Below are positions 22,276 through 54,159 of a stretch of DNA of 64,000 bases, in pieces. The stretch lies in the sequence record NC_061421.1; one strand, written 5' to 3'. Under the pieces are notes generated by a model, which was not told the DNA's origin, did not search any database, and worked only from the letters and a program-made list of their open reading frames with translations. How positions within the stretch are numbered: position 1 is the stretch's first letter; each line of letters begins with the position of its first letter. The position numbers were made by a program, and so were the translations under genes.

Positions 22276-24345
22276 CTATACGGTTTCGTAGTCGGTAATC
22301 TGACGACTGGTGTAAATGAACTTATACGGGTTGGGTTTGCTGTATTGTGCCACCGCCCCGACGGGGGTGTTGTACAGCTGAATTTCCCCAGAGCCGTATG
22401 ACGCGAAGGTTAACTTAGTGCCATTATCACTGGAACAACTGTAGAAGAACGACACTCCGCGTCCGTAGACGTTATTACCCACGGTGTCTTTACCGATGGC
22501 GTAAAGCGCGCCGCGAACGGTGTCGGTTACCTGGTTGCCACTCACCACGGATTCAAAATGAGCGACGTAAGTGTCCAGGCCGTACTCCTCGATCGGATAC
22601 CCGTCAACATTACGGTATGTAGACTGGAAACGAATCCCTGTGACGCCGGTAGTGACAAGAGAACCACGTTTGGCGCCCGTACCGTTACCAAAGTGATTTT
22701 CTATCGTACAACCAACCTCGAGGAATGTCCCTTTGACGCCTAACGAAATAGTTTGCCGATCCGCGCTGTGATGAGTCCCGTAAGTAAACCCATTGGCAAA
22801 TTTACAGTTTTGCACGAAGACTTCCGCGCCGTGGTTATTTAAGCACGCGCTGCCACAGGTTCCGGTAACGTTAATCCCTTTTGCCCAGAGTGATGGTTTC
22901 GCGTTCAGAATAATACTTTCCGCGCCGACCCCTATGTCAGTGTCGTTTATCGCAATGTTCTCAAGGTAAACACAACTGTTCCCGGTGACGTTCAACCCGC
23001 TCCCGGTCGCCACCACTTTAAGGTCGCTATCAGGTTTACGACTGTTCGATGTCTGTACCAGTATCGCAGACGAGGTAACACAGTAAGACCCCGGCGTAGC
23101 GACAACGGTACTTGGGCCATCAACCAAGGTTAACCGTTTAGGGAGTCCTTTGTCATCTAATACCCCGTAGTCAAGAACTCCGGCGACTGACAAATCGCTA
23201 GACAAGTACTGATAAACGGTGGTGCTATCGGAATACAGTGACCAGTTAGTGATCGAGAGATTACCCGTCAAGATAGGTTTGGTTGTCCCTTCACCGATAA
23301 TTGTCAGCGTTCGGTCAGCAATCGTTTTTCGTACGAAAAGCGAGGTAGTGTCTTTAATGATAATTGTACTGGCAGCCGGGGATTTATCCAGTGCCCCGTT
23401 AAGTGTTTTCAGCGGAGCAGAAGAAGTCCCCTCGTTATTGTCTGCGCCTAAATTGCCGTCGACATAGTAGGTGACACCAAACGGATAAAACCATTCTGCC
23501 AGATCCAGATCGGTACTGAATCGCATTAAACCTTGGGATAACGCCCCAGTGTATTGGAACTTATCCTTGAGCGAATCAAATACCGCGGGAAGTTTCGGAA
23601 CGCTGTTTAAACAATTGTTCGCGTTATCATACGAGGTTTCGTAAGACGGTCCCGTTAGTTCCAGTAATTGGCCGCTTCGGAATCGCGCGACGGTTGTTTC
23701 TGCTGTTAGTGCCGCAGACGTCAACGATTGAGTGCTGTCATTCCCCAGAACGATCCCGGTGTGACTAGCGGTAGGCAGGAAAGAGCCCTGTTTGCCCACC
23801 ACAAAATTCTCACCATTGATGCGACTCTTACCTGAAAGAGTAAAAGTTTTTCCATCGGACTGGTAGAGTTGATACGATGATCTTACCCAGTCGCGTATGG
23901 TGGACTCTTGTCCGAAGTACACTTCTAAAGATCCTGTGTACATCAATGAGGTTGAAACGGTTTTGACCGTGTATACCCCAATCGTGGTGGTAAGCGCGGT
24001 GGGATTGAAAGATTCACGTAAGATATCCGTCATGTCTAACTGAAGACCGTAATAACTATTCAGTCGATTGACGATATCCTCTGTGGTGAGTATCCCGGCG
24101 GTAGACATGAACACAATGGGCTCTGGAATGACTTTCGACAACGGCACTCGATTGTATTCGAAGATAGCCGAATCGCGATAATCTCCGCTGTCCGTTGCCA
24201 CGGCAGTGATGCGCGTATTAAACTCTCCACCTGTGATGGCAGTGAGGTTGATGAACTCCAGATCAGAGTCTTTGAAAAACGCGTCGTATTGCGTATTGAG
24301 CTGGCGTATCAGGAGCGCTTTGCTCTTTAAGGAAAAGTCGGTCAT
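22276..24345 (-). CDS. Virion protein: phiKZ-like baseplate/fibre anchor domain plus beta-helix (putative tailspike)
   Basis: N-term LIRQLN..NTRI..YNRV.L..LN.YYGL.L...DI; YYVDG...DNNEGT..PLKT beta-helix cap; paralog of 24361. Confidence 0.75.
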   Translation of the reverse strand: MTDFSLKSKALLIRQLNTQYDAFFKDSDLEFINLTAITGGEFNTRITAVATDSGDYRDSAIFEYNRVPLSKVIPEPIVFMSTAGILTTEDIVNRLNSYYGLQLDMTDILRESFNPTALTTTIGVYTVKTVSTSLMYTGSLEVYFGQESTIRDWVRSSYQLYQSDGKTFTLSGKSRINGENFVVGKQGSFLPTASHTGIVLGNDSTQSLTSAALTAETTVARFRSGQLLELTGPSYETSYDNANNCLNSVPKLPAVFDSLKDKFQYTGALSQGLMRFSTDLDLAEWFYPFGVTYYVDGNLGADNNEGTSSAPLKTLNGALDKSPAASTIIIKDTTSLFVRKTIADRTLTIIGEGTTKPILTGNLSITNWSLYSDSTTVYQYLSSDLSVAGVLDYGVLDDKGLPKRLTLVDGPSTVVATPGSYCVTSSAILVQTSNSRKPDSDLKVVATGSGLNVTGNSCVYLENIAINDTDIGVGAESIILNAKPSLWAKGINVTGTCGSACLNNHGAEVFVQNCKFANGFTYGTHHSADRQTISLGVKGTFLEVGCTIENHFGNGTGAKRGSLVTTGVTGIRFQSTYRNVDGYPIEEYGLDTYVAHFESVVSGNQVTDTVRGALYAIGKDTVGNNVYGRGVSFFYSCSSDNGTKLTFASYGSGEIQLYNTPVGAVAQYSKPNPYKFIYTSRQITDYETV

Positions 24346-24360
24346 TTTAAAATGCCCCTG

Positions 24361-26400
24361 TTAAGCGGTATAAATAAACTGGTACGGCGTCAATACTTGC
24401 GTGGCCGGTTTCGATCCAATATCCGTGTCGAACAATGCAATCTTCCCTACCGAATTCGGTGTAAAGGAAAACGCGCTGTTGTCAGTTTTACAACTCCAGT
24501 ATTGTGCTGCTGCGCTATTAAGAGAGTTTGTCCCTACGCAGTAGTGCGAAAGGTTACCGAGTGTGTTCGTTACAGAAGTAGACTGGCACGCGATGTTAAG
24601 AGAGAACGTCCCTTCCCCGGAGTCACTGACATGATTACCGTCACAGGCGGTGTACGTCGAATTAATACGGAGGATTGTCCCGTAAGAAGCCAAACGCGAT
24701 GCTGAGGACGTATGATTTCCATCAAAGCCGCAATAGCTGACAGTAGCACGATTCTCAATAACCCAGTACTTAACATTCATGGACGGGAGTACACGGTCGG
24801 TAGAATAACGGAAACCACCGGCGAAACCAAACTGAGCGATGCAATTCTGATGCGCGACGTTATAACCATAACTCCCGAAAGACGGGTCTTTAAATGTCCA
24901 CCCAAAGGTGCACTGCGACATGTAAAGATAGCCGTATGCGCGAGGGACGGTCATGTCCGCAATGAAACCGTTGTAGGAGAGATCGAAGTTACATTTCTCC
25001 ATAAACACATTGGCACTATCAGCGACCGAACCCGACAGAGTTTTAGCAATCAGGTAAACATTCGTATCCGGCTTACGATTATCCGAGAGATGGACATAAA
25101 CTCGACCGTTGGTATTGTCAACGTAGAAAGAGTGCGGAGTATTCGCGCAATCCACCGCGGATGTTTTTGCTAATAGTCTCCCGTACCCGGTAACCGAAGA
25201 AACTGTTTTATCTACCAACGTGGCAATGTCAGTCGCTGACGTATACCAGGTATTCGCATCGTAACCCGACCAGTTAGTGGTTTGGCGACTGGAGGTAAAG
25301 ACAGGATTACTGTCTCCGTAGCCTACGATATCCACTGTCCGGTTACGGATTGTTTGCGTCCAACCTGAATCGGCGTCGTAGTAGGCATCGCTATAACCCT
25401 TAACACGAATCACGCGGGCGGCGGGTAACGCATTGAGCGCACGTTTAAATGTTTTAAACGCCGTCGCTGCGGTTGTACCGTCGTTAGTATCTACGCCGGT
25501 TTTGATATCGACATAATAGACAGTGCCTGTCGCGGCGCGTTTGGTTGTAACATCAAAAGTGAGGTTGTAGCTCAAAACACCCGCATTCAGTGACGCAGTG
25601 ATTCCTAAAGTTTCCGGGATCGCAGAAAGTTGAGATGGCACTACTGGCATTTTGGGCAATAGCGCGCCGGTATTATCGTAAGACGTTTCCCCATTTAATC
25701 CCAGTATCTCCACTAAACGGTTATTCCGAAAACGCGCTAAGAGTTTATTCGTCGTGCTTTTATAACTGTTACTCGGAATGACTTTACCGGTCGGTGACAA
25801 ATACAACGCAGTGATGCCGTTTCGTTGTGCAAGGCTTCTGGAGACATCGACAACTGTCTGGCCGTTAATTGTCCAGTGACCGCCCATGTAATTGATAGTA
25901 CTGTAATCCGCCGCGACCATAAATTGCAACGCATTAAAGTAACTATATACCGCGTCTTGCGTACCCAGATAGATAGTTACGTCACCCGTATAAACCAGAT
26001 GGTTATCAGCAATGCTAAGTGTAATTTTCCGTACACCAGGGGCCACGTCATCCGGGCGATAAGGACCGTCAACAATGTCAGTGCTGGTCAACGCCAGTTC
26101 ATATTTTTGGTTGATGTAAGGAATAAGGTCAACGAGACGTGAAAGCGCGAGGTCTTCCAATTGGCAATACGGTCGCGCTAAAAGCTTCTTGAAGCTCAGG
26201 CGGTTATATTGTACAGCAACCCCTAAGGATTGCAAAGAAGAACCGTTGGAGAGCGTTATGGAAGTATTCAGTCCATTAATCACGGTTGTGTTAGTAGCGG
26301 GCGTCCCTAACGAGATTGTGGAGATCGTATAGTTCGTACCGTTCGCTTCATTAATCAGATCGATCGCGATCTGTTTTGGGGTCTGTTTCAGATCAACCAT
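24361..26400 (-). CDS. Virion protein: phiKZ-like anchor domain plus beta-helix (putative tailspike)
   Basis: LINEAN..NTSI..YNRL..LIPYINQKYEL.L...DI; YYVD..GVDTNDGT..FKT; C-term PYQFIYTA vs PYKFIYTS. Confidence 0.75.
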   Translation of the reverse strand: MVDLKQTPKQIAIDLINEANGTNYTISTISLGTPATNTTVINGLNTSITLSNGSSLQSLGVAVQYNRLSFKKLLARPYCQLEDLALSRLVDLIPYINQKYELALTSTDIVDGPYRPDDVAPGVRKITLSIADNHLVYTGDVTIYLGTQDAVYSYFNALQFMVAADYSTINYMGGHWTINGQTVVDVSRSLAQRNGITALYLSPTGKVIPSNSYKSTTNKLLARFRNNRLVEILGLNGETSYDNTGALLPKMPVVPSQLSAIPETLGITASLNAGVLSYNLTFDVTTKRAATGTVYYVDIKTGVDTNDGTTAATAFKTFKRALNALPAARVIRVKGYSDAYYDADSGWTQTIRNRTVDIVGYGDSNPVFTSSRQTTNWSGYDANTWYTSATDIATLVDKTVSSVTGYGRLLAKTSAVDCANTPHSFYVDNTNGRVYVHLSDNRKPDTNVYLIAKTLSGSVADSANVFMEKCNFDLSYNGFIADMTVPRAYGYLYMSQCTFGWTFKDPSFGSYGYNVAHQNCIAQFGFAGGFRYSTDRVLPSMNVKYWVIENRATVSYCGFDGNHTSSASRLASYGTILRINSTYTACDGNHVSDSGEGTFSLNIACQSTSVTNTLGNLSHYCVGTNSLNSAAAQYWSCKTDNSAFSFTPNSVGKIALFDTDIGSKPATQVLTPYQFIYTA

Positions 26401-26531: not shown

Positions 26532-26933
26532 TTATTCGTCGTCTTCGAAGTCTTCCGGTCCAGATTGGTAGTCGTCGTCTTCGTCGTCTTCGTCAAAATC
26601 ATCGAGGTCTTCTTCATCGAGAAGATCCGGATCGGTCTCTTCGAGGTACCAGTCGTTATCGGCCAGTAACGCATTGAAAGAATCGCTACCCGCTTCGATT
26701 AACGCTTCGGTGACGGCCCCGGAATCGTTTTCGGTAACACTCACAACGGTGAGGTCTTCCCCGTCAACGCTTTTGTCGGCGACGTCCGGTTTGTACAACT
26801 CGAATCCTATCTGAGTGTTAACTGTTTCCAACGTCTCAGAAAGATCCAGCGGATCGACGGGTCGGCCATTTTTATCAGTGACTTCGAACGTTTCTTCTTC
26901 GGTATTGAATTTCAGGATTGTGCGGTGGGTCAT
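26532..26933 (-). CDS. Highly acidic protein (133 aa) with D/E tail
   Basis: C-term DEEDLDDFDEDDEDDDYQSGPEDFEDDE. Confidence 0.75.
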   Translation of the reverse strand: MTHRTILKFNTEEETFEVTDKNGRPVDPLDLSETLETVNTQIGFELYKPDVADKSVDGEDLTVVSVTENDSGAVTEALIEAGSDSFNALLADNDWYLEETDPDLLDEEDLDDFDEDDEDDDYQSGPEDFEDDE

Positions 26934-27259
26934 TTCCAGTCCTCTTGTTTACGTTTAAGGAAAAGTGCATCGATTACCTTGAGATCAATGGCGATCACTT
27001 CGGTATCGGCATGGGGTTGTAAAAAGTAAAGCGATAGGGTTTCGGTGTCCGTCAATTTTCCAACGACATTAAAAAGAACACCATTAACCATTCCACTAAC
27101 GCCGGTTTTCAGGTTTAGGGCAACGATTAATTGTCGTCCTAATAGGTCACAATTATTTCCAGGGTATTCATTTTTTAACTTAAATAAAACACGGGAAATC
27201 TTTTCTTGCCATTTCGGGATGACAAGCTGTAAGAGTTCGGTTCGAGTGAGAGCTAACAT
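26930..27259 (-). CDS. Hypothetical protein (109 aa)
   Basis: 4-nt overlap with the acidic gene. Confidence 0.7.
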   Translation of the reverse strand: MLALTRTELLQLVIPKWQEKISRVLFKLKNEYPGNNCDLLGRQLIVALNLKTGVSGMVNGVLFNVVGKLTDTETLSLYFLQPHADTEVIAIDLKVIDALFLKRKQEDWK

Positions 27260-27373
27260 ATTTTTACCTGGTGTGATTTTTCTTCATAATAACTTTGCGT
27301 TATTTTTGATGTTTTTAGGTCGGGAAAAAATGAAGGGTTATTGGTATGTGAACACCAAAAACTAACAAGGTAA

Positions 27374-27595
27374 ATGACAAAGATGAGTCTCGCAATTATT
27401 CCTACTACAGCACAAAAGATCGTGGAAATTACTCGTAGCAAAATCGACCCAAATGCAGTAACGCTAATTTTTGAAGACGGTAAAGACGAAACCTTTTTGG
27501 ACTGGTTTGTTCAGAAACACAAACCCGCAGTAGGTCGTTTCTTGGCGAAAGATGTGGAAGGATTTACGCACGTCATCGACAGTATTGAAGCTTAA
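27374..27595 (+). CDS. Hypothetical protein (73 aa), isolated plus-strand gene
   Basis: AAGG RBS, TATG at 27345-27348, ends before a bidirectional hairpin. Confidence 0.65.
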   Translation: MTKMSLAIIPTTAQKIVEITRSKIDPNAVTLIFEDGKDETFLDWFVQKHKPAVGRFLAKDVEGFTHVIDSIEA

Positions 27596-27605
27596 AACAA
27601 GATAC

Positions 27606-27639
27606 AGATTGGTGAGGGGTTAATTCCCCTCACCAATCT
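27606..27639. terminator. Bidirectional terminator between convergent genes
   Basis: AGATTGGTGAGGGG-ttaatt-CCCCTCACCAATCT. Confidence 0.8.
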
Positions 27640-27883
27640 ACTCTATGTTTGTATTTAAAACGTCTTGCTCGGAATAGAACTTATCTTCTACTACGCTGTC
27701 AAACGCCATAGAACGCATCAGGAGCGATTCAACTGGTCTATGGTAATAAACCTTATTATCCCAGGGAGGAAGCAAATTAGAGAGCAATAAGGCGGCTTCC
27801 GTGACCAACGGTAAATTGTCATCGGGTACAAAAGAAAGTGCTTCGTCCAATGCTTCGAGCAAAACATGGCGGGGGGTAAACAT
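27638..27883 (-). CDS. Hypothetical protein (81 aa)
   Basis: AAGGA RBS before MFTPRH at 27883. Confidence 0.6.
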   Translation of the reverse strand: MFTPRHVLLEALDEALSFVPDDNLPLVTEAALLLSNLLPPWDNKVYYHRPVESLLMRSMAFDSVVEDKFYSEQDVLNTNIE

Positions 27884-28059: not shown

Positions 28060-29856
28060 TTAAGAAAGGTATGCGTAAATCTGGCGATTTTTAGCGTCTA
28101 TACCAGTAAGGTTGACAGTGATCGTGGTACCATCGGTGGAAATACCCACTGTGAAACTGACTCCCGTAGGTGTGCTACTACTATCACCCCAACGATTAGT
28201 AGGATAGGTTTTAAGATTGCCGAGATCGGTGATTAATGTCGGGTTAGTCGTCTCCCACCCCATGAGTAACGGGACTCTTAGGTATTCTAAGTTGCCAGCT
28301 GAGCCATCTCTTGATTCGATATTGAGATTGTAGACATTAGGAATTTGATATTTAGTTAATGCAGTCCGGGTGAATGAAAATGAGGCAGTGCCCCCGGCGT
28401 TTAATGTAATGTTTACGGGGCTACCGATAGAAACGCGACCATTCCTAATTTGAAATACGCCTACTGTACAAGCATTTGAGATACCGTGGTTGCCGAAATA
28501 CGTTTTACTAGCGGCAATAGCGGTTTCTTTAACAAAACCAAGATAACCGCCACTGAAATAAGAACCAGTAACAACAGTTACCATCGACGAACCATTTCCG
28601 GTCGTAATGATATCGTATTCCGGAGTTGCTGTCCCTGTGCCATCGTCATTCACCCCTCTTGTAGTTCTGATTCCGGTGAGTACCAAGACGGAGTCGTCAG
28701 ATTGGAGAATATTACATTGTTCGGTTGTCCCCGCCGTACCTTTACTACCATTACGCTGAATTGAGCAGGTAGAACAAGTGATTGAGGATCCCCCCATCAC
28801 CGCCAAACCTGCTTTTCCGTTCCTATCAATCAGCTCACCGGTGTATGTGTTACCTACCGACTGGTAAAGATAGATACCTTCTCCATCGTTCCACTCGATT
28901 CTCACACCCACAAACGCATTATTATTTGCGCCAGTCAGTAAAGAGATTGCCCGACCGGTATTGGCGTTAAAAGTTGTGTCCATTAATCTGGAGTCAATTA
29001 AATTGTTAGCGCCGAGATTACACCCGTGAATGTTACACCCTCTAGCGTACAAGGTACCTACGTAGTTAGATTTACCTAAGCCTATAGCCCAACGATAAAT
29101 ACCACAACGCTCAAATCGACAACCGTTAAGTTGACCGCTACCCTGCATCAAATTGACCGATTTATCTCTCCCGTCAAAATTGATACCGACGAAATTATGT
29201 CGCCCGGTGAAAGCGAATAAGTAACTCGCCCCCGCGCCCAGTCTTATAACTGTCCCGGTATTATCGAAACTACTGTTTGATGGTGTGGTATAGGGTCGAT
29301 AGCAACTCCCGTAAATACAGAACCCCATAGGTATGGTCACGGTACCTGCATGAACATAAACCCCGACTACCGGCGGATATACTAGATACTTTTCCCCGGC
29401 GTCAATTGCGGCTTTCAATGCATAATCAACGTTGACTTCTACACCAACAGTACTCTTAATGAGCAGTTGATCTTCTTTCGTCATATACGAAAGAATGTTA
29501 GAGGATAAAAGATCAGTGACCTTCGCATTCCCTATCTCACTTATTGAATCCATTTCCTCGTTTAAATCGCGGAGATTGAGGTACTTATTTAATGCATAGA
29601 CACCATTATCAGTTACCACTTGCAAAACGTTCTGCGATGACAGCGTCACTGTGGTTATGGTACCTGTTAAACCCCCAAGATCGAAGAACTGATTGCTTTC
29701 TTCATGAAATAGTACGCTTTCCGTACCTGATGGAATAACTGCACCAACTTCGGCTTTGATAATGTTACTTTCGTCGACCCCGTATAACTGAGCGTTTACT
29801 TGATTCTGTACCTTTAACCCTGTTGATCCGGAAGGTTGTACTAAACGATCTAACAT
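28060..29856 (-). CDS. Tailspike with Kuttervirus TSP1/TSP3-like head domain and beta-helix
   Basis: N-term QPSGSTG..NQ..A..YGV.ES; D.A..AAID cap; repetitive beta-helix with N/C/G ladders. Confidence 0.85.
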   Translation of the reverse strand: MLDRLVQPSGSTGLKVQNQVNAQLYGVDESNIIKAEVGAVIPSGTESVLFHEESNQFFDLGGLTGTITTVTLSSQNVLQVVTDNGVYALNKYLNLRDLNEEMDSISEIGNAKVTDLLSSNILSYMTKEDQLLIKSTVGVEVNVDYALKAAIDAGEKYLVYPPVVGVYVHAGTVTIPMGFCIYGSCYRPYTTPSNSSFDNTGTVIRLGAGASYLFAFTGRHNFVGINFDGRDKSVNLMQGSGQLNGCRFERCGIYRWAIGLGKSNYVGTLYARGCNIHGCNLGANNLIDSRLMDTTFNANTGRAISLLTGANNNAFVGVRIEWNDGEGIYLYQSVGNTYTGELIDRNGKAGLAVMGGSSITCSTCSIQRNGSKGTAGTTEQCNILQSDDSVLVLTGIRTTRGVNDDGTGTATPEYDIITTGNGSSMVTVVTGSYFSGGYLGFVKETAIAASKTYFGNHGISNACTVGVFQIRNGRVSIGSPVNITLNAGGTASFSFTRTALTKYQIPNVYNLNIESRDGSAGNLEYLRVPLLMGWETTNPTLITDLGNLKTYPTNRWGDSSSTPTGVSFTVGISTDGTTITVNLTGIDAKNRQIYAYLS

Positions 29857-32756: not shown

Positions 32757-32951
32757 TCAACTACCAGAATTGTCCTCGTTAGTCCTGTCTTCTAAAAGAA
32801 AAGAATCATCCAAACCCTTTTCTGATAGGAACCCAAGAGCAGCTTCTTGATAGTTTTCTACTTCTTCGAAGGAAACAATAGCCTCTCCTAGTTCAATCCT
32901 TGAAAGAAAATAGACGTTATCCCGAGCTGTATCTTTGTAAATATAAATCAT
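32757..32951 (-). CDS. Small acidic protein (64 aa) translationally coupled to a tailspike
   Basis: TGATG overlap at 32949-32953. Confidence 0.6.
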   Translation of the reverse strand: MIYIYKDTARDNVYFLSRIELGEAIVSFEEVENYQEAALGFLSEKGLDDSFLLEDRTNEDNSGS

Positions 32952-37278: not shown

Positions 37279-37301
37279 TTTAGGTCCTATCAAAACGTGA
37301 A

Positions 37302-37331
37302 AAGCGAAGGAGGAGAAACTCTCCTTCGCTT
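37302..37331 (-). terminator. Terminator hairpin
   Basis: AAGCGAAGGAG-gagaaact-CTCCTTCGCTT. Confidence 0.75.
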
Positions 37332-37345: not shown

Positions 37346-37639
37346 TCAGGATTGACCGTTAATACCAAAACTAGCAGATAGTTCTTTCTCTGCTTGTTCT
37401 AATATTTCTTCCCCTGATTGGCTTTCAGTAACGATTTTGAAAGTTACTGCCCCTTGAGAAAACCCTTCTATATCCACCGTAAAGAAAATCTCGGCGATAT
37501 CTCCTATATATTTTCCCCCGTAATTAATACTTGTAGCCGTATACGTGGCTTCTAGGGATTTTAAAGAAGGTGTAGATGAAGATCCAATTTCATCAATTTT
37601 CTCTTTCGTATAAAATTCTTTGACTACAGTAAAGCTCAT
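37346..37639 (-). CDS. Small tailspike-associated protein (97 aa)
   Basis: Follows spike stop by 11 nt, GAGG RBS; MSFTV.KE..TYTA..F.V..G...F..EQAE..L pattern. Confidence 0.7.
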   Translation of the reverse strand: MSFTVVKEFYTKEKIDEIGSSSTPSLKSLEATYTATSINYGGKYIGDIAEIFFTVDIEGFSQGAVTFKIVTESQSGEEILEQAEKELSASFGINGQS

Positions 37640-40302: not shown

Positions 40303-40342
40303 TGCAAGAAACCTCATTGTCGGCAATAGGGCTGTAAAAATA

Positions 40343-40354
40343 GTCATAGGAAAA
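40343..40354 (-). promoter_or_regulatory. Putative late promoter (TATG)
   Basis: Minus strand TTTTCCTATGAC; its ATG was mis-picked as the ORF start 40347. Confidence 0.6.
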
Positions 40355-40357: not shown

Positions 40358-40387
40358 ATAGAGAGGGGCCGAAAAGCCCCTCTCTAT
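40358..40387 (-). terminator. Intrinsic terminator hairpin
   Basis: ATAGAGAGGGGC-cgaaaa-GCCCCTCTCTAT. Confidence 0.8.
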
Positions 40388-42698: not shown

Positions 42699-42729
42699 TT
42701 TTCCACCCTCAGGGTTAAAAGAAAGTTAA

Positions 42730-42744
42730 TCATACGAAACAAAA
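42730..42744 (-). promoter_or_regulatory. Putative late promoter (TATG)
   Basis: Minus strand TTTTGTTTCGTATGA, identical to 45154-45168 on plus. Confidence 0.65.
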
Positions 42745-42745
42745 C

Positions 42746-42769
42746 TGAGAGGGGCGTAAACCCCTCTCA
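42746..42769. terminator. Hairpin at the divergent junction
   Basis: TGAGAGGGG-cgtaaa-CCCCTCTCA. Confidence 0.7.
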
Positions 42770-42855
42770 ACGTATGTTTAATAATGTTTCACTTGCAATG
42801 ACAGAACAGCGGTTGATAAATCGTGGGAGTATAACCAATCTTAATCACGGTCACG

Positions 42856-42884
42856 ATAGTCAATGCTATGATACGATTGACTAT
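42856..42884 (+). promoter_or_regulatory. TATG motif inside a 9-bp inverted repeat
   Basis: ATAGTCAAT-gcTATGatacg-ATTGACTAT, 38 nt upstream of ATG 42908. Confidence 0.45.
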
Positions 42885-42907
42885 TAGAGACAATATAAGG
42901 TAAAATT

Positions 42908-45124: not shown

Positions 45125-45154
45125 ATAGAGGAGGGCGAAATCGCCCTCCTCTAT
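45125..45154 (+). terminator. Intrinsic terminator hairpin
   Basis: ATAGAGGAGGGCGA-aa-TCGCCCTCCTCTAT then TTTGTTT. Confidence 0.85.
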
Positions 45155-47519: not shown

Positions 47520-49559
47520 ATGTCTAATGAAACACAGAAAATTAGCGAGTTGAACCCTGCTACTACGCTGACTGAACACACTCTGTTCCCCGTGGTCTCT
47601 GAACAGACGGAGACCAGTAACACAGATATCTCGACACTGCGTTCAGTCTTGTTGTTCGACAAAGCTTTCAACTCAATCGCAGAAGGTACAGATGGAACGG
47701 AGAAAGGAGAGTCTTATTTTGTTTACACGGATGCAACCAAAACCGCGGTACAGGGTTACGTCAACCAAGGTGGGGGTTCTTACACGCCACTTGTAGATAT
47801 CAATGGCGTCGCAGTCCGGTATATCTCCGGGCAGACGCTACGAGGGTTAGATTATTTTACTAACGGCGTAGATTCCTTCGCTAAGTTACGGACACTATCG
47901 CCTCTATACGCTGGGCAACGCGTAAAGTTGAAAAGTTGGGTAGCGGGTGGAAAAACAGGTGGTGGGGAATTTATCGCCGGAATCGGATCGGCGACGGATG
48001 ACAACGGCACGATTGCCGCCGGGAATGGATTCTACTGGCAACGGATTATTTCCGATCGGTTGTCTTTTGAGGATTTCGGTGCGGTCGGGGATGGTGTACT
48101 GGACGATACCAGTAACATTCAAAAAGCGGTCAACTACTGTGCTAAGAACGGCATTGCACTAACGTGTTTAGGGAAAGTCTACGCAGTCAGTACCGTAAAT
48201 TTCCCAACCGATTTAGTGATCGATATGTGTAACGCGGTACTTTTGTCGTTACCCTCTGTTACGACGGGTTATACCTTAACAATCAGCGGTTATTTGTCTC
48301 CTGCGGCTAATCCAGGAAAATTTGATAATATTCGTGTTCAGCGTACCTTAATTAATACTCATCAGCCCGACACTAACAGCGTCGTAGACGGCGTGTCATT
48401 TGGAGTTGATGCGCACAATATTTCCTTCTATAATCTCAAGGTCTCTGGGTTTAGGGACGGAGTTTGTTTTAACGGGAAAAGTGCTTATCTCATTCGTTTA
48501 TACAGCCCGATCATTGGGCAGTGTTGGCGCCGAGGGATGGCCTTTTATGCGAATACTGATTCCAATGAAAACGTGACCATTTACGGCGGCGTGATTGCGG
48601 ATTGTTGTAATTTCACTTTCGACGGTACTGGGGTCTACTTATCAGGGAGTGCCTCAAGTATTGATGTCAGGTTCTTTGGGACCAGTTTTGATTATTGCGA
48701 CATCTCAGTTGATCTTTATCAATCTAACGTCGAGCTTCACGGTTGTCACTTGGAAAACAATAATAACAACCCCCATATTCGACTTTCGTACACCTCAACC
48801 AAAAACCAACCCTATCTGATCATGAAAGGGGGAACAATGGGAGGCGGACCGAACGCGAACTCGTGGAGCGGTATTCCGATAGAAAATAGTACGGGTCGTC
48901 CTTACCTCGTCTTCATTACCAACACTGGCGGTGCCCACGTTGACATTGATGGAACTGACACCAGTAAATACATGACAGGAGTCAGGAGAACTACCGAGAT
49001 CGTAGGTGTAGAGGGCGATAACTACCAGTTGATCGGGACCTTAAGGGTGAGGAACAAAATGACCTCTGGGAACATGGATAACGCCAGTCGCCCCATGCGA
49101 CCTTGTAGTGCCCTTAACGTGATTCTGATCAACCAATATCAAACTGCCGCATGGACACCGAGTTACACTAACGCTGACCTCACTTATACGATTGATACTA
49201 CGAATTACTCTAACCCTAATTCACCGCACTCACGAAAAATTACACAAGGAAGCGTACGTAATGTCTCTTACTGGCAGGACGTGACACTGCGCGGCGGAGA
49301 TATTTTCCACGCGGAGGCCGAAATCAAAATCACATCATTGACGGCTGGTTACGTCGCGCTTAGAGTGGATTTTTACGACTCTGCCGGGAACGTAATACAA
49401 TCGTCAATCAAATCCGTATCTGCGGTGACGGCTGATTGGAATAACGTGTGGGTCTGGTTACGCGCACCAAACGGTACAGTCAAGGCAAAAGTTCAAGAGT
49501 ACTTAAACGGTTTTGTCGGAACGGCGTATTTCACCAATGAACACGTTTGGATTTCTTAA
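47520..49559 (+). CDS. Tailspike/depolymerase: KISEL anchor, N-domain, beta-helix, C-terminal CBM-like sandwich
   Basis: QKISEL; SFAKLR.L.P.YAGQRV.L; FEDFGAVGDGVLDDT..IQKA; GTSFDY. Confidence 0.9.
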   Translation: MSNETQKISELNPATTLTEHTLFPVVSEQTETSNTDISTLRSVLLFDKAFNSIAEGTDGTEKGESYFVYTDATKTAVQGYVNQGGGSYTPLVDINGVAVRYISGQTLRGLDYFTNGVDSFAKLRTLSPLYAGQRVKLKSWVAGGKTGGGEFIAGIGSATDDNGTIAAGNGFYWQRIISDRLSFEDFGAVGDGVLDDTSNIQKAVNYCAKNGIALTCLGKVYAVSTVNFPTDLVIDMCNAVLLSLPSVTTGYTLTISGYLSPAANPGKFDNIRVQRTLINTHQPDTNSVVDGVSFGVDAHNISFYNLKVSGFRDGVCFNGKSAYLIRLYSPIIGQCWRRGMAFYANTDSNENVTIYGGVIADCCNFTFDGTGVYLSGSASSIDVRFFGTSFDYCDISVDLYQSNVELHGCHLENNNNNPHIRLSYTSTKNQPYLIMKGGTMGGGPNANSWSGIPIENSTGRPYLVFITNTGGAHVDIDGTDTSKYMTGVRRTTEIVGVEGDNYQLIGTLRVRNKMTSGNMDNASRPMRPCSALNVILINQYQTAAWTPSYTNADLTYTIDTTNYSNPNSPHSRKITQGSVRNVSYWQDVTLRGGDIFHAEAEIKITSLTAGYVALRVDFYDSAGNVIQSSIKSVSAVTADWNNVWVWLRAPNGTVKAKVQEYLNGFVGTAYFTNEHVWIS

Positions 49560-49572: not shown

Positions 49573-49794
49573 ATGTTTCAAGTAGGCGACACCGTTCGCA
49601 TCCTTTCTTGTCAAACTCGAGAAGACTTAGTCGGGAAAGAAACGACCATCAGTGCACTGGACGCTAAACTGGAAGATTTGGCTTGGGCAGATATCTACGG
49701 AATGGATCAATATATTTCGGTGGTCATCGATACCGATGCACGATTTATTGCGGCTCAACTGGAACTCGTAGCCAGTGACATTGAAGGCTCTTAA
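49573..49794 (+). CDS. Small protein (73 aa), SH3/KOW-like start
   Basis: AAGGA RBS before MFQVGDTVRI. Confidence 0.6.
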   Translation: MFQVGDTVRILSCQTREDLVGKETTISALDAKLEDLAWADIYGMDQYISVVIDTDARFIAAQLELVASDIEGS

Positions 49795-49799: not shown

Positions 49800-49833
49800 A
49801 GGCAATGAGGGGACCTAGGTCCCCTCATTGCCT
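49800..49833 (+). terminator. Perfect 34-bp palindrome terminator
   Basis: AGGCAATGAGGGGACCT-AGGTCCCCTCATTGCCT. Confidence 0.8.
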
Positions 49834-49846
49834 TGTTTCGTATGAC
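49833..49846 (+). promoter_or_regulatory. Putative late promoter (TATG)
   Basis: TTGTTTCGTATGAC, 30 nt upstream of ATG 49874. Confidence 0.65.
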
Positions 49847-49873
49847 CGGTTAGCTTTCTTCAGGAAAACAAAT

Positions 49874-51868
49874 ATGTCTAATGATACTCAAAAAATTTCG
49901 GAATTAGGGAGTGCGACTAGCATCCCTGAGAACTCAATGGTCCCTATAGTGACGGCTCCTACCGAAACGAATCAGATCACTCTTTCTTCGTTGCGCTCAG
50001 TATTAAATTTCGAAAGTGCTTTTGATACTATCGAATTAGGATTGGCCGGAACAAAAAAGAACGAACCCTTCTTCGTTTACACTGATGATACGCGGTCGTT
50101 TGTTAACGGGTATATCAACCAAGGAGGTGACACTTTTGCATCGCTTCTCGATAAGGACGGTAAGCAAATCAATAATGTTGTTTACAGTAAAATCATTGGG
50201 AGCGTTTATCGTGGATTTGTTACCGGGCTCTGTCAGAACGCTGGGTTTGCAAACGATAACATTGTCGTCTTAAAGAAAGGGTTAGTGCTCTCGGGAATCA
50301 TGGTAGTCATCGACACTACTTCGCTCCGTTTTTATTTCAGCAACAATTCGACACTCACTGTTGACCATTGGACGCAGAGCGGCGATGACCTTGTGGCGAC
50401 GGATTCCTCAGGGAATAACGTTATACTAGTAGACGGTTGGTCACAGTTATTAACGGGCGGTACTCTCCCTGTTGACGTAAGAAGCGAGACTATTGATTTC
50501 TGGGAAAGAATTAAAACCAACGGGCAATTTGATCTGACAGCTAGGCCAAACGACCCGAAAGGAATTGCAGGTATCGTTTTTGGCGGTAAGAATAACAAAG
50601 GTGCGTTGGTTATTGACCAGCGAGGTCGTCTCCAAACCTATGCGATTAAAAATGGTGTCATGTCGGCGGCCAGAATGGCCATCCCTGTAACGGAACCTTA
50701 CGGTTATGGCACCGGGTCACGGTTAGGAAGTATCACTCGCTTCCCGGTCAGTGGCGCGGAAGACGATAGTCTCTCTTCTTCTATTATTTTTCTACCTCAA
50801 GCAGATGGATCGGCGAAAGCATATTTGGCGGGGCCAGGACTATATACAAACTTTGCTGCGCCTTTTCCTGATGCCGTAAAACGCGTAGCTAAAGAGATTG
50901 TTACAGCCGACCTTTTACCAAGTGCTTTATTGAATTCTTCTACAAACCCAACCGATTGGCTCAGCACAGAGTCTTGGGTTAAATTAGTGACGGTCAATGA
51001 CAATATTCAGGGTTCAGTATTCAGCGGTATTTATTCCGGTGGGGCGGGTTTATCAGAAGCTGTATGTGCTTACTTGATTGAGTTCCAATCGAAACCGTCG
51101 AACGTGACCACGGTCAACGCAAACACACTGCGCTACTACCTTAGAATTACGTCGCTCCGTTCTCGGGGAGATCTGCGTTACAACTCAGGAACGGTACGTT
51201 TTGGGGTGGTGCGAGATGCTACGGCTAATACTTCGACACTTTATGCGCGCTTAGCGGTTCGTTCTGAGAACTCTTCCCTTATCCCTTTGCGCGCTGATCC
51301 GCCTGGTTCCGATGGCGTCGCGAAAGTAACCATCAATACTGTATTAAACAGCTATGTTACGGTTGAGCCAGCCGGGATCGTATATCTTCCCGTTACGGAG
51401 TCGCTGACTACCAACGTCGCTGTTCAGCTCAATAATGGGACGTATGCTCAGACACGCGGAGCGGTGATTCGATTGACGAATAATCTTTCAGCCAACACCC
51501 GAGGATCCTTCGTTACCTCGGGGGAATTCGCCGCAAACGATACTTTATCTGCTATCAACCGGGGCTACGCCGGGCTAGGAGCAGTGACGGCTGCCCGAGT
51601 ATCAACAGGGAAATATACGATCACAGGAGCCTCTACAGGAACTTCCTCGGTTTCTTGGAAAATTACGTCACCATTTGGATCGTTTGGCTCCGGTATTCAG
51701 AATTTGGTGGCGGTAATCGAATCAGATGTTTCTAATGTCATTACCGTAGGCGTGAGAAAAATTCTTTATACCGCGGATACTACTACAGGCGCGGTCACGA
51801 CATCATTAGGGGATTATGTTGACATCCCAGTTGACACTTGGATCGATATTCATACTACGCTCAACTGA
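49874..51868 (+). CDS. Tail fibre: KISEL anchor with a non-beta-helix body and fibre-type C-terminal domain
   Basis: Start moved to MSNDTQKISEL; C-term A..V.TG.Y.I.G...W...P....DIP..WIDI. Confidence 0.75.
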   Translation: MSNDTQKISELGSATSIPENSMVPIVTAPTETNQITLSSLRSVLNFESAFDTIELGLAGTKKNEPFFVYTDDTRSFVNGYINQGGDTFASLLDKDGKQINNVVYSKIIGSVYRGFVTGLCQNAGFANDNIVVLKKGLVLSGIMVVIDTTSLRFYFSNNSTLTVDHWTQSGDDLVATDSSGNNVILVDGWSQLLTGGTLPVDVRSETIDFWERIKTNGQFDLTARPNDPKGIAGIVFGGKNNKGALVIDQRGRLQTYAIKNGVMSAARMAIPVTEPYGYGTGSRLGSITRFPVSGAEDDSLSSSIIFLPQADGSAKAYLAGPGLYTNFAAPFPDAVKRVAKEIVTADLLPSALLNSSTNPTDWLSTESWVKLVTVNDNIQGSVFSGIYSGGAGLSEAVCAYLIEFQSKPSNVTTVNANTLRYYLRITSLRSRGDLRYNSGTVRFGVVRDATANTSTLYARLAVRSENSSLIPLRADPPGSDGVAKVTINTVLNSYVTVEPAGIVYLPVTESLTTNVAVQLNNGTYAQTRGAVIRLTNNLSANTRGSFVTSGEFAANDTLSAINRGYAGLGAVTAARVSTGKYTITGASTGTSSVSWKITSPFGSFGSGIQNLVAVIESDVSNVITVGVRKILYTADTTTGAVTTSLGDYVDIPVDTWIDIHTTLN

Positions 51869-51879: not shown

Positions 51880-53541
51880 ATGAACTATTATTACATTGAT
51901 TCTTCCGCTACAGTTAACGGCGTTGGGACAAAAGGTAACCCCTTTAATTCGATTCAGTCAGCCATTGACGCCAACTTAACTCATCCTCTAACACTATACC
52001 TTAAAGCAGGTCAAACCTACGAACTAGCGTATTATAATCGTACCACTGCCAGTTTCTTTAACAATAAAACAGGCGTCCAGTCCGTCATTACTCGATACGG
52101 TACTGGTGCCAAGCCAATTCTCACCAGTAATAACGATACAATTATCATTGATGCGTACGCGTGCCAGATAAAATTTGAGAATATTCGCATTTCCCCAAAA
52201 CCAGGGTCAGAAAGAACCGCCATCTATCTTAACCTGATCCCGATAGGCGATAGTGCCAATAACAACATTTGTAACTTAACGCTAAACAAGGTTGATTTTA
52301 TTGGCACCCCTGAATCAATAGGGGGGATGAACGGGATTAACCGCGTGTTCTGTTTAAACAGTTTGGTCGATTATGCCGGTCTCAGTAATATTGCGCATAA
52401 ACTCTTAATCAGTAACTGTACATTTGACAACGTTAACGCTGGCGTTCAGTTGAGAGGTAACCCTGATCTCTCAGACAAAACGACCTATCACGGTGACCAG
52501 AAGAAAAGTTATGGTTTTAGAGTGATTAATTGCTCGTTTACGAATATCATTAACTCGGCGGTGTTCATCGGGTGGGCGGCAAGTAAAAATCAATCGAGAG
52601 ATGTCATTGGTGATGATATGGCGACAGGTGTAGACGGTTTGTACTATTCCAGTTACCGTTACAACGTCTACAATACATCAACGGGTGCGTCTCAAGCAGA
52701 CGTCCCAGTCTGGTTCTCTGGAACGCGTTATCTGACATTACAGAATTTCGAAATTCATGGCGCCGGCCCGGCTTACCCCGACCGTCAAACCATTGACTTT
52801 GATTATCATTGTCACTATTGCGTGGCGCGTTACGGGTACACCTCAAACAACGCACGTGGTTCAATGATTATCCAAGGACCTTTCAGTAACAGCTGGTACA
52901 GTTCTAAAGGATACACACCATTGTCCAATGATGCGTATACTTTGTACTATACGCTTGGTTTTGGGTCGATTGGCAACGTCATTGAATACGTTATTTCTTT
53001 CAACGACGGGGTAGGGAGAACGACCAGTACTGCTGATAAATATTGGCAGAAAACTTCTGCGTTCCGATACGTTTATGATAACGTAGTGCGTAACTGTGTC
53101 TTTATTGATACCGTGACCACGGCGAACGATAACGTGATTGCCATTAACCCACAGACAGACGACAGTTTAACTGCGCTGAGCCTGACTTTGGACAGTAACA
53201 TTTTCTACTATGCTAACAAGACCGCCACGGAATTAGTCACTCCTGCTTCGATGACTAACTTCCCGACCATGATGTCTAAATTCAAATTGAAAAATAATAT
53301 TTTCTTTTCTGAAAAATGGGCAGGTGCAACGCCGACTTCAACGGGACTGATCGAAGAAGGGAATCTCTTTACTAACCCTGCTTTTTTACAAGGGTTGTCG
53401 AACAGTTCTTTTGCGGGCTTGAAAGAAGCGTTGTTGGCTATCAAATTGAAAATGACTAGTCCTTGTATTGGGAGTGGCTCATCAAACAATAACCCAGACT
53501 TTATCGGTAAAGTTGGGAACAACATCGGATCAATTCAATAA
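51880..53541 (+). CDS. Anchorless beta-helix polysaccharide depolymerase-like protein
   Basis: Begins directly with YYIDS...NG.GT..NPF.SIQ.AI beta-helix cap; ends F.NP.F...SP.IG.G. Confidence 0.8.
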   Translation: MNYYYIDSSATVNGVGTKGNPFNSIQSAIDANLTHPLTLYLKAGQTYELAYYNRTTASFFNNKTGVQSVITRYGTGAKPILTSNNDTIIIDAYACQIKFENIRISPKPGSERTAIYLNLIPIGDSANNNICNLTLNKVDFIGTPESIGGMNGINRVFCLNSLVDYAGLSNIAHKLLISNCTFDNVNAGVQLRGNPDLSDKTTYHGDQKKSYGFRVINCSFTNIINSAVFIGWAASKNQSRDVIGDDMATGVDGLYYSSYRYNVYNTSTGASQADVPVWFSGTRYLTLQNFEIHGAGPAYPDRQTIDFDYHCHYCVARYGYTSNNARGSMIIQGPFSNSWYSSKGYTPLSNDAYTLYYTLGFGSIGNVIEYVISFNDGVGRTTSTADKYWQKTSAFRYVYDNVVRNCVFIDTVTTANDNVIAINPQTDDSLTALSLTLDSNIFYYANKTATELVTPASMTNFPTMMSKFKLKNNIFFSEKWAGATPTSTGLIEEGNLFTNPAFLQGLSNSSFAGLKEALLAIKLKMTSPCIGSGSSNNNPDFIGKVGNNIGSIQ

Positions 53542-53551
53542 CGCACCAAAC

Positions 53552-53583
53552 ACAGACAGAGGGGCATGAGCCCCTCTGTCTGT
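53552..53583. terminator. Bidirectional terminator at the convergent junction
   Basis: ACAGACAGAGGGGC-atga-GCCCCTCTGTCTGT. Confidence 0.85.
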
Positions 53584-53592
53584 TTATATCTT

Positions 53593-54159
53593 TTATTCGT
53601 CGGCTTGTTCAACCAGAATGAATTTGCTGTCTTCGGTATTAATCGCTTTACCGCTCTCAGTAAGCAGTGAACCGCGAGGAATTTTGCTACCGCCACTACA
53701 GGTAACATCCAGATTACCAGACCAAACATGGCTGTTATAAGTTGTACCGGCTTTAGTCTGAATCGTCACCACCGCCGTTTCACCGGTCGGAATGAACGGT
53801 AAATAATCTGACGCATTAGCGATATCTTCAACGTCGATGTACAGGCTGTATTTTGCCTTGATCAGCGGTAAAAGATCCGCAATCGTCGACGCGGTCTCTG
53901 GTAGCACAAGAGTCGGGCCGACGGATGACATCAGTTTGTTCAGTTCGATGCGAGTGTAGGTAAAGGTCTTGCTACCCGTCACCGGGGAACGGCCTGTAAC
54001 GAGTACAGAGATACGATCTTCGGTACCCGGTACAGTTGAACCGGTGATGTTACCGAAGCTCAGATAACTCGCGTTAAGCGGCGTGGTGAGGTTATTCTGC
54101 TGACTGATCAGATCAGCGAGAATCTCAAATTTGGGACGACCGAATAAATCGACGTACAT
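53593..54159 (-). CDS. Virion protein with a phiKZ-like anchor domain only, plus acidic tail motif
   Basis: Start moved to MYVDLF (GGAG RBS); DLI..N..YTRI.L..LLP.I..KY.L.I...DI; tail GSLLTESGKAINTEDSKFILVE. Confidence 0.7.
   Translation of the reverse strand: MYVDLFGRPKFEILADLISQQNNLTTPLNASYLSFGNITGSTVPGTEDRISVLVTGRSPVTGSKTFTYTRIELNKLMSSVGPTLVLPETASTIADLLPLIKAKYSLYIDVEDIANASDYLPFIPTGETAVVTIQTKAGTTYNSHVWSGNLDVTCSGGSKIPRGSLLTESGKAINTEDSKFILVEQADE

What the first reader, a model, noticed from the sequence alone, without database searches (positions are those of the whole stretch)
22276..54159. Arsenal of 13 receptor-binding proteins covering half the window
22276, 24361, 28060, 29902, 32951, 35011, 37651, 40470, 42908, 45199, 47520, 49874 and 51880 are spike- or fibre-like; 12 have beta-helix signatures. 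Three different virion-attachment heads are used, plus one headless enzyme. Established precedents with many depolymerases are Klebsiella phages phiK64-1 and phiKp24. Inference: a capsule/O-antigen generalist on an encapsulated enterobacterium, and a rich source of new depolymerases.
Basis: partly seen in the sequence, partly recalled or inferred. Interest (0 to 1): 0.72.

Follow-up and report, generated by a model that had tools for sequence, protein, structure and literature searches.

The report
Tail-fibre arsenal of Klebsiella phage phiKp24
The window is the published Klebsiella jumbo phage phiKp24 itself, and the 13 genes are its known cluster of capsule-degrading tail fibres, so the finding is real but already described; one small addition is that two of the genes form a travelling pair also found inside bacterial capsule loci.

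Summary
All 13 ORFs are intact at the stated coordinates. Twelve are beta-helix type and one (gp312) is not. There are three N-terminal attachment classes and one enzyme with no head (gp313).

Twelve of the 13 genes are in the published list of 14 hyperbranched tail fibres (Ouyang 2022). Nine of them already have capsule specificities measured with recombinant protein (DepoCatalog 2026).

What I add:
- gp312, absent from the published list, is a non-enzymatic RaK2-gp526-like fibre.
- Its body is always encoded next to a homologue of the headless enzyme gp313. This holds in 33 of 33 phage records where both positions were shown, and in capsule or EPS regions of E. coli, a Klebsiella-type contig and Pantoea.
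- gp294, gp295 and gp314 are conserved backbone genes, not swapped cassettes.
- The small ORFs gp302, gp305 and gp311 travel with the fibre body upstream of them.

How gp313 works with gp312 (docked enzyme, soluble enzyme or folding partner) is unresolved.

The parts
22276..24345 (-). gp294: DUF7941 head (aa 1-146) plus a C-terminal body. Conserved backbone gene with no catalogued activity.
   Evidence: Pfam DUF7941, E 5.7e-20. 72-98% identical over full length in four relatives. No entry in the DepoCatalog supplements.
24361..26400 (-). gp295: paralogue of gp294 (27% identity), DUF7941 head plus a hydrolase-like body.
   Evidence: Full-length homologues at 41-99% identity, including one from Serratia phage 2050HW. 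The family profile matches the start of GH136 chain 7v6m, E 2.5e-7.
26532..27883 (.). gp296-gp299: four small ORFs of unknown function, conserved in all relatives, separating gp295 from gp300.
   Evidence: No Pfam or PHROG hit. 59-100% identical in four relatives.
28060..29856 (-). gp300: class III head plus beta-helix. Published K25 depolymerase.
   Evidence: Pfam Beta_helix, 29.4 bits against a cut-off of 25.9. K25 assignment in DepoCatalog.
29902..32649 (-). gp301: class I head, gp10-like branching segment, enzyme body and a C-terminal Peptidase_S74 intramolecular chaperone. Published K35 depolymerase.
32757..32951 (-). gp302: 64-aa ORF that travels with the gp303 body.
   Evidence: Present only in LPKP23 and MJ359, the two relatives that carry the gp303 body.
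32951..34936 (-). gp303: keeps only the first ~13 residues of the class III head, then the body. Published K64/KL178 depolymerase.
   Evidence: Alignment A5. gp303 aa 18-384 aligns to gp304 aa 96-453. In MJ359 the same body carries a full head. Activity.
35011..37278 (-). gp304: class III head plus body. Published K19 depolymerase.
37346..37639 (-). gp305: 97-aa ORF that travels with the gp306 body.
   Evidence: phrog_7836. Found only in KpLz-2_45, the one relative that has the gp306 C-terminus.
37651..40302 (-). gp306: class I head plus two gp10-like branching segments (aa ~100-295). Proposed hub fibre. Published KL137 depolymerase.
   Evidence: PDB sequence hits 9d83 and 9d80 (E 1e-25) and CBA120 TSP4 N-terminus 7rej (E 2e-11). 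Hub model. Activity.
40470..42698 (-). gp307: class I head plus beta-helix. Published KL114 depolymerase.
   Evidence: Pfam Beta_helix, 34.3 bits. Activity.
42699..42907 (.). Divergent control region between the two arms of the cluster.
   Evidence: GenBank annotates two back-to-back promoters here. A 12-pair hairpin lies at 42744-42771.
42908..45121 (+). gp308: class I head plus body. Published K46/KL146 depolymerase.
45199..47454 (+). gp309: class I head plus body. Published KL158 depolymerase.
47520..49559 (+). gp310: class I head plus body. Published K61 depolymerase.
49573..49794 (+). gp311: 73-aa ORF that travels with the gp310 body.
   Evidence: 99% identical in KpLz-2_45, the only relative with the gp310 C-terminus.
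49874..51868 (+). gp312: class I head plus a RaK2-gp526-like non-enzymatic fibre body (aa ~200-664) ending in a Phage_tail_C_2-like domain. Not in the published list of 14.
   Evidence: The hairpin at 49800-49833 supports the start at 49874.
51880..53541 (+). gp313: beta-helix enzyme with no head, always encoded next to a gp312-type body.
   Evidence: AF2 model with pLDDT 82 and pTM 0.86. Best folds are GH136 lacto-N-biosidases, then PL6 lyases and tailspikes. Adjacency.
53552..53583 (.). Two-way terminator hairpin closing the plus-strand arm and the gp314 unit.
   Evidence: 14-pair stem followed by a T-rich tail. Annotated on both strands in GenBank.
53593..54159 (-). gp314: stand-alone DUF7941 'head-only' protein, 96-100% conserved in relatives.
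   Evidence: Pfam DUF7941, E 6.9e-16. Conservation.

Best explanation
The region is the receptor-binding gene cluster of Klebsiella jumbo myophage phiKp24.

Shown:
- Thirteen intact genes in two divergent arms encode modular proteins: an N-terminal attachment module followed by a variable body.
- Nine of the bodies are capsule depolymerases with measured, mostly single K-type specificity.

Published model, supported here by sequence:
- gp306, and secondarily gp301, carry T4-gp10-like branching segments and act as hubs.
- The other class I-headed proteins dock on these hubs, giving a hyperbranched fibre in which each enzyme opens a different capsule type.

Inferred from comparison with four relatives:
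- The heads are kept and the bodies are exchanged as cassettes, in three cases together with a small downstream ORF.
- gp294, gp295 and gp314 (DUF7941) and gp296-299 are fixed backbone genes.

My addition:
- gp312 plus gp313 is a two-gene cassette. gp312 is a non-enzymatic gp526-like fibre that supplies the head. gp313 is an anchorless beta-helix enzyme that depends on it.
- gp313 most likely acts as a bound partner or folding partner of gp312, less likely as a free enzyme.
For: Identity and layout:
- The window is 100.0% identical over 24,001 nt to MW394391.1 and NC_061421.1, and the gene layout matches the annotation.

Published data:
- Ouyang 2022 lists 14 fibres, 12 of them in this cluster, a host range of 9 K types, and a hub model built on gp306.
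- DepoCatalog reports 11 active enzymes, with per-gene K types.

My tests of modularity:
- All-against-all BLASTP and alignments define the three head classes.
- gp306 aa 103-294 and gp301 aa 111-191 match solved branching fibres, including the N-terminus of CBA120 TSP4.
- gp301 carries Peptidase_S74 above the Pfam cut-off.

Cassette exchange:
- Heads are 60-99% conserved in the relatives, while bodies are absent or relocated. gp294, gp295 and gp314 are 72-100% conserved over full length.
- gp302, gp305 and gp311 are found only where the matching body is found.

The gp312/gp313 pair:
- The two genes are 12 nt apart, between the hairpins at 49800 and 53552.
- In 33 of 33 phage records where both matches were displayed they are adjacent, on the same strand, with the body first. 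These records span roughly eight size classes and named groups, from 44-kb phages to jumbo phages.
- Direct pairwise checks gave E 2e-130, 1e-49, 8e-144 and 2e-26.
Against: - I found no virion proteomics for phiKp24, so the attachment of each protein is a model.
- gp294, gp295, gp312 and gp313 have no catalogued activity.
- For the pair: RaK2's virion MS/MS table lists gp526 (15 peptides) but not gp525, the gp313 homologue. This argues against a stably docked enzyme.
- The profile comparison between gp313 and gp294/295 is not significant, and gp313 is only 13-14% identical to GH136 enzymes.
- In Pantoea the gene order is reversed.
Confidence: 0.9

Rival explanations
1. gp313 is not part of the virion. 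It is made as a free, diffusible enzyme released at lysis that strips polysaccharide from neighbouring cells, as Latka et al. 2019 proposed for its homologues in phages 1513 and KpS110. On this reading only 12 of the 13 are receptor-binding proteins.
For: - gp313 has no head or docking peptide; the beta-helix starts at residue 2.
- Latka 2019 lists the homologues as 'additional RBP' without an anchor and suggests they are soluble enzymes.
- The homologue gp525 is absent from the RaK2 virion MS/MS table.
Against: - A free enzyme would not need to stay welded to one particular fibre body, yet it does so in every phage record examined and in three bacterial contexts.
- gp313 is missing from the 11 active phiKp24 enzymes in a catalogue tested on K1-K82 and KL101-KL186.
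Confidence: 0.3
2. gp294 and gp295 are not serotype-specific capsule depolymerases. They are conserved structural tail or baseplate proteins, possibly acting on a common, non-capsular glycan, so the variable arsenal is really 9 to 11 proteins.
For: - They are conserved over full length at 72-99% in four relatives whose other fibres are swapped, and at 41% in a Serratia phage.
- The PHROG families that hit the head are labelled 'virion structural protein'.
- A third DUF7941 protein, gp314, has no body at all.
- Neither protein has a catalogue entry.
Against: - Ouyang 2022 models them as beta-helical putative depolymerases.
- The family profile matches the start of a GH136 beta-helix, and gp295 hits a PHROG 'hydrolase' family.
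- Conservation alone does not exclude an enzyme with a conserved target.
Confidence: 0.5
3. The cluster is a bacterial or prophage polysaccharide locus, or an assembly artefact of repeated genes, rather than a lytic phage fibre cluster.
For: Homologues of two of the genes do occur in bacterial capsule loci.
Against: - The window is colinear and identical with a complete 307-kb phage genome.
- The same layout occurs in at least four other ~300-kb phages.
- The paralogues are only 25-48% identical to each other, so they cannot be mis-assembled repeats.
Confidence: 0.01

Closest known systems
Klebsiella phage vB_KpM_FBKp24 (phiKp24) hyperbranched tail fibres (Ouyang et al. 2022, PMC9700779; DepoCatalog 2026, PMC13385381)
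   Same: It is the same sequence. Twelve of the 13 genes are in the published list of 14, and nine have measured K types.
   Different: - The published list omits gp312 and adds gp168 and gp196, which lie outside this window.
- It treats gp313 as a short-headed peripheral fibre.
- Neither paper mentions gp312 or gp314 in the text I searched.
RaK2 gp526-like RBP class and the RaK2/phiK64-1 adsorption complex (Noreika et al. 2023, PMC10253068; bioRxiv 10.64898/2026.05.12.724579)
   Same: - The gp312 body is 46% identical to RaK2 gp526 over 98% of its length.
- gp526 is a virion fibre protein without a depolymerase domain.
- The class is known to cross phage morphotypes.
   Different: - gp312 carries the phiKp24 class I head instead of the RaK2 head.
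- The constant pairing with the downstream gp525/gp313-type enzyme is not mentioned in the passages I retrieved. 'gp525' has zero occurrences in both RaK2 papers.
GH136 lacto-N-biosidase LnbX with its partner LnbY
   Same: - GH136 enzymes are the best structural match to the gp313 model (E 2e-10, TM ~0.6).
- LnbX needs co-expression of the adjacent gene for activity. This is an analogy for an enzyme tied to its neighbouring gene.
   Different: - Identity is only 13-14%, and gp313 has no Pfam hit at E <= 0.01 and no NCBIfam hit.
- LnbY is an all-helical domain, whereas the gp312 body is beta-rich.
- I did not compare catalytic residues.
CBA120 / G7C type branched tailspike complexes (T4 gp10-like docking domains)
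   Same: gp306 aa ~200-275 matches the N-terminal branching part of CBA120 TSP4 at sequence level (7rej and 7rfo, E ~1e-11).
   Different: There are 13-14 partners here instead of 2-4, three unrelated head types, and no solved structure of this complex.
Pantoea stewartii WceF, a tailspike-like beta-helix enzyme encoded in an EPS gene cluster (PDB 6tgf)
   Same: - It is a precedent for phage-RBP-like proteins inside bacterial polysaccharide loci.
- 6tgf matches part of gp306 by sequence and part of the gp312 model by fold.
   Different: WceF is a single protein with its own beta-helix. The bacterial loci noticed here carry a two-gene pair, and in E. coli it lies on the opposite strand to the cps operon.

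Membership tests
phiKp24 tail-fibre cluster (identity with the published phage) | Nucleotide identity and colinear gene order with MW394391.1 | tested here: met
   100.0% over 24,001 nt. The annotated CDS coordinates map one-to-one when 186,000 is subtracted from the record position.
Branched multi-depolymerase RBP systems of Klebsiella phages | A hub protein with T4-gp10-like branching domains | tested here: met
   gp306 aa 103-294 and gp301 aa 111-191 match solved branching fibres.
Branched multi-depolymerase RBP systems of Klebsiella phages | Shared N-terminal docking domains or peptides on otherwise unrelated bodies | tested here: met
   Three head classes. Heads are conserved and bodies swapped in relatives.
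Branched multi-depolymerase RBP systems of Klebsiella phages | Enzymatic degradation of specific capsule types | not testable with these tools
   Taken from the literature: nine of the 13 have measured K types. gp294, gp295, gp312 and gp313 have none.
Branched multi-depolymerase RBP systems of Klebsiella phages | Physical presence of each protein in the virion fibre | not testable with these tools
   The phiKp24 papers I searched contain no proteomics. Cryo-ET shows branched fibres but does not assign proteins to them.
RaK2 gp526-like RBP class (for gp312) | Sequence homology across the whole body | tested here: met
   46% identity over 98% of the body, E 1e-116. BFVD fold hit to RaK2 H6X4Y3, E 2e-52.
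RaK2 gp526-like RBP class (for gp312) | No polysaccharide-degrading beta-helix domain | tested here: met
   The model body (pLDDT mostly 80-95) has no beta-helix, and no PDB enzyme matches with TM above 0.2. No enzyme family is found in Pfam or NCBIfam.
GH136 glycoside hydrolases (for gp313) | Right-handed beta-helix fold resembling LnbX | tested here: met
   Foldseek E 2e-10 to 1e-9, TM 0.57-0.62.
GH136 glycoside hydrolases (for gp313) | Sequence-level family membership | tested here: not met
   No PDB sequence hit at E <= 0.1. No Pfam family at E <= 0.01 and no NCBIfam family. Identity is 13-14%.
GH136 glycoside hydrolases (for gp313) | Conserved catalytic acid/base and nucleophile residues | not tested
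   The tools returned no residue-level structural superposition. The gp313 family does have many invariant Asp, His, Glu and Arg columns.
Endosialidase-type intramolecular chaperone (for gp301) | Peptidase_S74 domain at the C-terminus | tested here: met
   PF13884, 33.8 bits against a cut-off of 22, aa 809-868. PDB hits 4uw8 and 3gw6.
DUF7941 (for gp294, gp295, gp314) | Pfam PF25613 above the gathering score | tested here: met
   72.4, 68.5 and 59 bits against a cut-off of 27.

The most novel reading that the evidence does not exclude
gp312 plus gp313 represent a mobile two-gene receptor cassette. It pairs a non-enzymatic gp526-like fibre body with an anchorless beta-helix enzyme, and the two depend on each other as a complex or as folding partners.

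The cassette has moved between phage lineages ranging from 44-kb phages to jumbo phages. It has also moved into or out of the capsule loci of Klebsiella, E. coli and Pantoea.

If true, this would explain why gp313 has no catalogued activity, assuming it was tested alone. It would also mean some bacterial K loci carry a phage-type fibre-and-enzyme pair of unknown role.
Probability: 0.45. Interest if true: 0.5.

Novelty: already known. Interest (0 to 1): 0.25.

Why it matters
The cluster explains how one phage can infect many capsule types of a priority drug-resistant pathogen. That story is published, and the enzymes are largely characterised.

What remains open is the function of four proteins (gp294, gp295, gp312, gp313) and which protein accounts for the host type K81, which no catalogued enzyme covers.

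The strict gp312-gp313 linkage gives a concrete, descriptive lead for two of the four. It also connects phage fibres to unannotated gene pairs inside bacterial capsule loci, which may matter for how K loci and phage receptor-binding proteins exchange genes.

Tried and rejected
- Sequence searches of gp312, gp313, gp295 and gp314 against PDB chains gave no significant hit.
- Pfam and PHROGs gave nothing for gp303 and gp304. They also gave nothing for the small ORFs gp296-299, gp302 and gp311.
- NCBIfam added only a sub-threshold hit for gp294 and gp295.
- A profile-profile comparison of the gp313 family with the gp294/295 family was not significant (probability 0.6%). I dropped the idea that the two enzyme groups are related.
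- The PDB fold search with the whole gp312 model gave only low-TM matches to propeller or sandwich folds. I do not name a fold for its body beyond the match to the gp526 class.
- I first read gp303 as a second headless enzyme. Alignment A5 showed it keeps the first ~13 residues of the class III head, so I count it in class III.
- I looked for statements about inactive or insoluble phiKp24 proteins in DepoCatalog and found none. I cannot say whether gp313 was expressed alone and failed, or was not tried.
- The sigma-70 promoter scan found no more sites than in shuffled sequence (36 against a mean of 36.0). I use only the GenBank promoter annotation and the hairpins.
Full report
**What is there.** The 13 coordinates in the finding are the ends of 13 intact ORFs of 553 to 915 aa. 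Eight lie on the minus strand between 22276 and 42698, and five on the plus strand between 42908 and 53541. They diverge from a 209-nt control region. Together they make up 27,957 nt, or 43.7% of the window.

**Identity.** Window 22000-46000 is 100.0% identical over 24,001 nt to Klebsiella phage vB_KpM_FBKp24 (phiKp24; MW394391.1 and NC_061421.1). Window position equals record position minus 186,000. The 13 ORFs are gp294, 295, 300, 301, 303, 304, 306, 307, 308, 309, 310, 312 and 313.

**What is published.**
- Ouyang et al. 2022 (PMC9700779) list 14 putative tail fibres with depolymerase domains. They are gp168 and gp196 elsewhere in the genome, plus 12 of the present 13.
- The same paper reports a host range of nine K types (K2, K13, K19, K25, K35, K46, K61, K64, K81).
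- It also proposes a hyperbranching model in which gp306 is the primary fibre and gp301 a secondary hub.
- DepoCatalog 2026 (PMC13385381) reports that 11 of the 14 are active as recombinant proteins.
- Its supplements give the following specificities for proteins in this cluster:

| Protein | Capsule type |
|---|---|
| gp300 | K25 |
| gp301 | K35 |
| gp303 | K64/KL178 |
| gp304 | K19 |
| gp306 | KL137 |
| gp307 | KL114 |
| gp308 | K46/KL146 |
| gp309 | KL158 |
| gp310 | K61 |

- gp294, gp295, gp312 and gp313 have no entry.
- K81 is not covered by any catalogued enzyme.
- Neither phiKp24 paper that I searched contains virion proteomics, and neither mentions gp312 or gp314.

The three head types are real.
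- Class I is a domain of about 100 aa (phrog_27731). It is shared by gp301, 306, 307, 308, 309, 310 and 312 at 31-40% identity to gp301, with 11 invariant columns.
- Class II is DUF7941. It occurs in gp294 and gp295 and as the whole of gp314.
- Class III is shared by gp300 and gp304 (aa 1-71, E 8e-5). gp303 keeps only its first ~13 residues; M1, P8, G10 and S11 are invariant among the three. In phage MJ359 the same body carries the full head.
- gp313 has no head. In my AlphaFold2 model (pLDDT 82, pTM 0.86) the first strand starts at residue 2.

'Twelve with beta-helix signatures' also holds, because the exception is gp312. Its model (body pLDDT mostly 80-95) has no beta-helix and no PDB match with TM above 0.2. 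Its best matches among viral models are the KpS110 'tailspike', RaK2 fibre H6X4Y3 and T4-type gp37 tips. No other paralogue is present in the window.

**Hub and chaperone features.**
- gp306 aa 103-294 matches solved branching fibres 9d83 and 9d80 (E 1e-25). It also matches the N-terminal part of CBA120 TSP4 (7rej, E 2e-11).
- gp301 aa 111-191 matches 9d83 as well.
- The gp301 C-terminus carries a Peptidase_S74 intramolecular chaperone above the Pfam cut-off.

**Cassette structure.** I compared the cluster with Centimanus, LPKP23, MJ359 and KpLz-2_45.
- The heads are 60-99% conserved, while the bodies are missing, replaced or moved.
- gp294, gp295 and gp314 are conserved over full length at 72-100%. 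gp296-299 and gp315 are conserved at 59-100%.
- gp295 has full-length homologues down to 41% identity in a Serratia jumbo phage.
- The small ORFs gp302, gp305 and gp311 are found only in those relatives that carry the body of the fibre gene just upstream.
- The exchangeable unit is therefore the body, in three cases plus a downstream accessory gene. The DUF7941 genes frame the cluster as backbone.
- Strong hairpins sit in the gaps between units, at 37302, 40358, 45125, 49800 and 53552.

**The gp312-gp313 pair.**
- gp313 homologues are all full length (550-561 aa, 33-90% identity).
- In every context examined they sit beside a homologue of gp312 aa ~200-664:
  - a KpS110-like contig;
  - a 142-kb phage contig (E 2e-130);
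  - KpLz-2_45 gp090/gp089 (E 2e-26);
  - a Klebsiella-type cps locus (E 1e-49);
  - Pantoea dispersa (E 8e-144).
- tblastn against 50,697 phage records found gp313 homologues in 46 records and gp312-body homologues in 39.
- In all 33 records where both positions were displayed, the two are adjacent, on the same strand, with the body first. These records run from 44-kb and 50-kb phages through 62-kb, 145-kb and Ackermannviridae genomes to RaK2, Miami and the phiKp24 relatives.
- gp312 is thus a member of the published 'RaK2 gp526-like' class of non-enzymatic virion fibres.
- Latka 2019 treated the gp313 homologues of KpS110 and 1513 as anchorless 'additional RBPs', possibly soluble. The same paper flagged the fibre upstream of them as lacking enzymatic activity.
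- I did not find the constant pairing stated in the papers I searched.

**How the pair may work.**
- The best fold matches of gp313 are GH136 lacto-N-biosidases (TM ~0.6), then PL6 lyases and Sf6 and HK620 tailspikes. GH136 LnbX needs its adjacent gene for activity. This is an analogy only, because the partner proteins are unrelated in fold.
- RaK2's virion MS/MS table contains gp526 but not gp525. That speaks against a stable docked enzyme and for either a soluble enzyme or an assembly partner.
- I rate functional dependence of the two genes at about 0.45 to 0.6. I leave the mode of dependence open.

**Bacterial copies.** The pair occurs at 99% identity or more in 16 of 5,426 complete E. coli genomes and in K. 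pneumoniae, K. variicola and K. quasipneumoniae. In E. coli MRSN346595 it lies between wzx and gnd of a group-1 type capsule locus, on the opposite strand to the operon. RaK2's 2013 annotation already noted the likeness to Pantoea Pat9b_0331 and Pat9b_0332.

**Verdict.** Interest is low for the finding as written. The gp312-gp313 cassette and its bacterial copies are a modest, testable addition.

Noticed in passing
L012:12001-15202 (E. coli NZ_CP018109.1); L005:8452-11653; L002:10001-13333: Homologues of the gp312 body and gp313 lie as a pair of 'hypothetical proteins' inside bacterial capsule or EPS regions. In E. coli and Klebsiella they sit between wzx and gnd, on the opposite strand to the cps operon. 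In Pantoea dispersa they sit between an EPS cluster and an integrative element, in reversed order. The pair is present in 16 of 5,426 complete E. coli genomes.
   Followed up: partly
L013:2765-6197 (RaK2 ORF525w and ORF526w): The RaK2 virion MS/MS table lists gp526 (15 peptides) but has no entry for gp525, the gp313 homologue. The anchorless enzyme may therefore not be a virion component.
   Followed up: partly
window 32757-32951, 37346-37639, 49573-49794: The small ORFs gp302, gp305 and gp311 (64-97 aa; no known family except phrog_7836 for gp305) co-occur in relatives only with the C-terminal body of the fibre gene upstream of them. They may be body-specific accessory or assembly factors.
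   Followed up: partly
window 54210-54596 (-): gp315 carries a DUF488-N3a domain (Pfam E 1.2e-6, 29.3 bits against a cut-off of 27). It is 84-100% conserved in relatives. Its function here is unknown.
   Followed up: no
window 37302-37331, 40358-40387, 42744-42771, 45125-45154, 49800-49833, 53552-53583: A family of strong intergenic hairpins with similar G-rich stems marks the unit boundaries. Terminator-like sites number 26, against 16.5 +/- 3.5 in shuffled sequence. One hairpin lies in the leader of gp307, inside the divergent promoter region, and is not annotated in GenBank.
   Followed up: no
window 47520-49559 and 29902-32649: The GenBank note assigns a Peptidase_S74 domain to gp310. Pfam finds S74 in gp301 (aa 809-868) and not in gp310 at E <= 0.01.
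   Followed up: yes
window 49805-49873, 37279-37293, 40303-40347: The longest ORFs of gp312, gp304 and gp306 begin upstream of the annotated starts. For gp312 the 49800-49833 hairpin supports the annotated start. For gp312 and gp306 the head alignment from residue 1 does too.
   Followed up: yes
window 14300-16366 (-): By size and synteny with annotated relatives (Centimanus, LPKP23, MJ359), the ORFs at 14300-14989 and 15152-16366 correspond to the PnuC-like transporter and the NadR-like NAD salvage enzyme of these jumbo phages. I did not test this directly.
   Followed up: no
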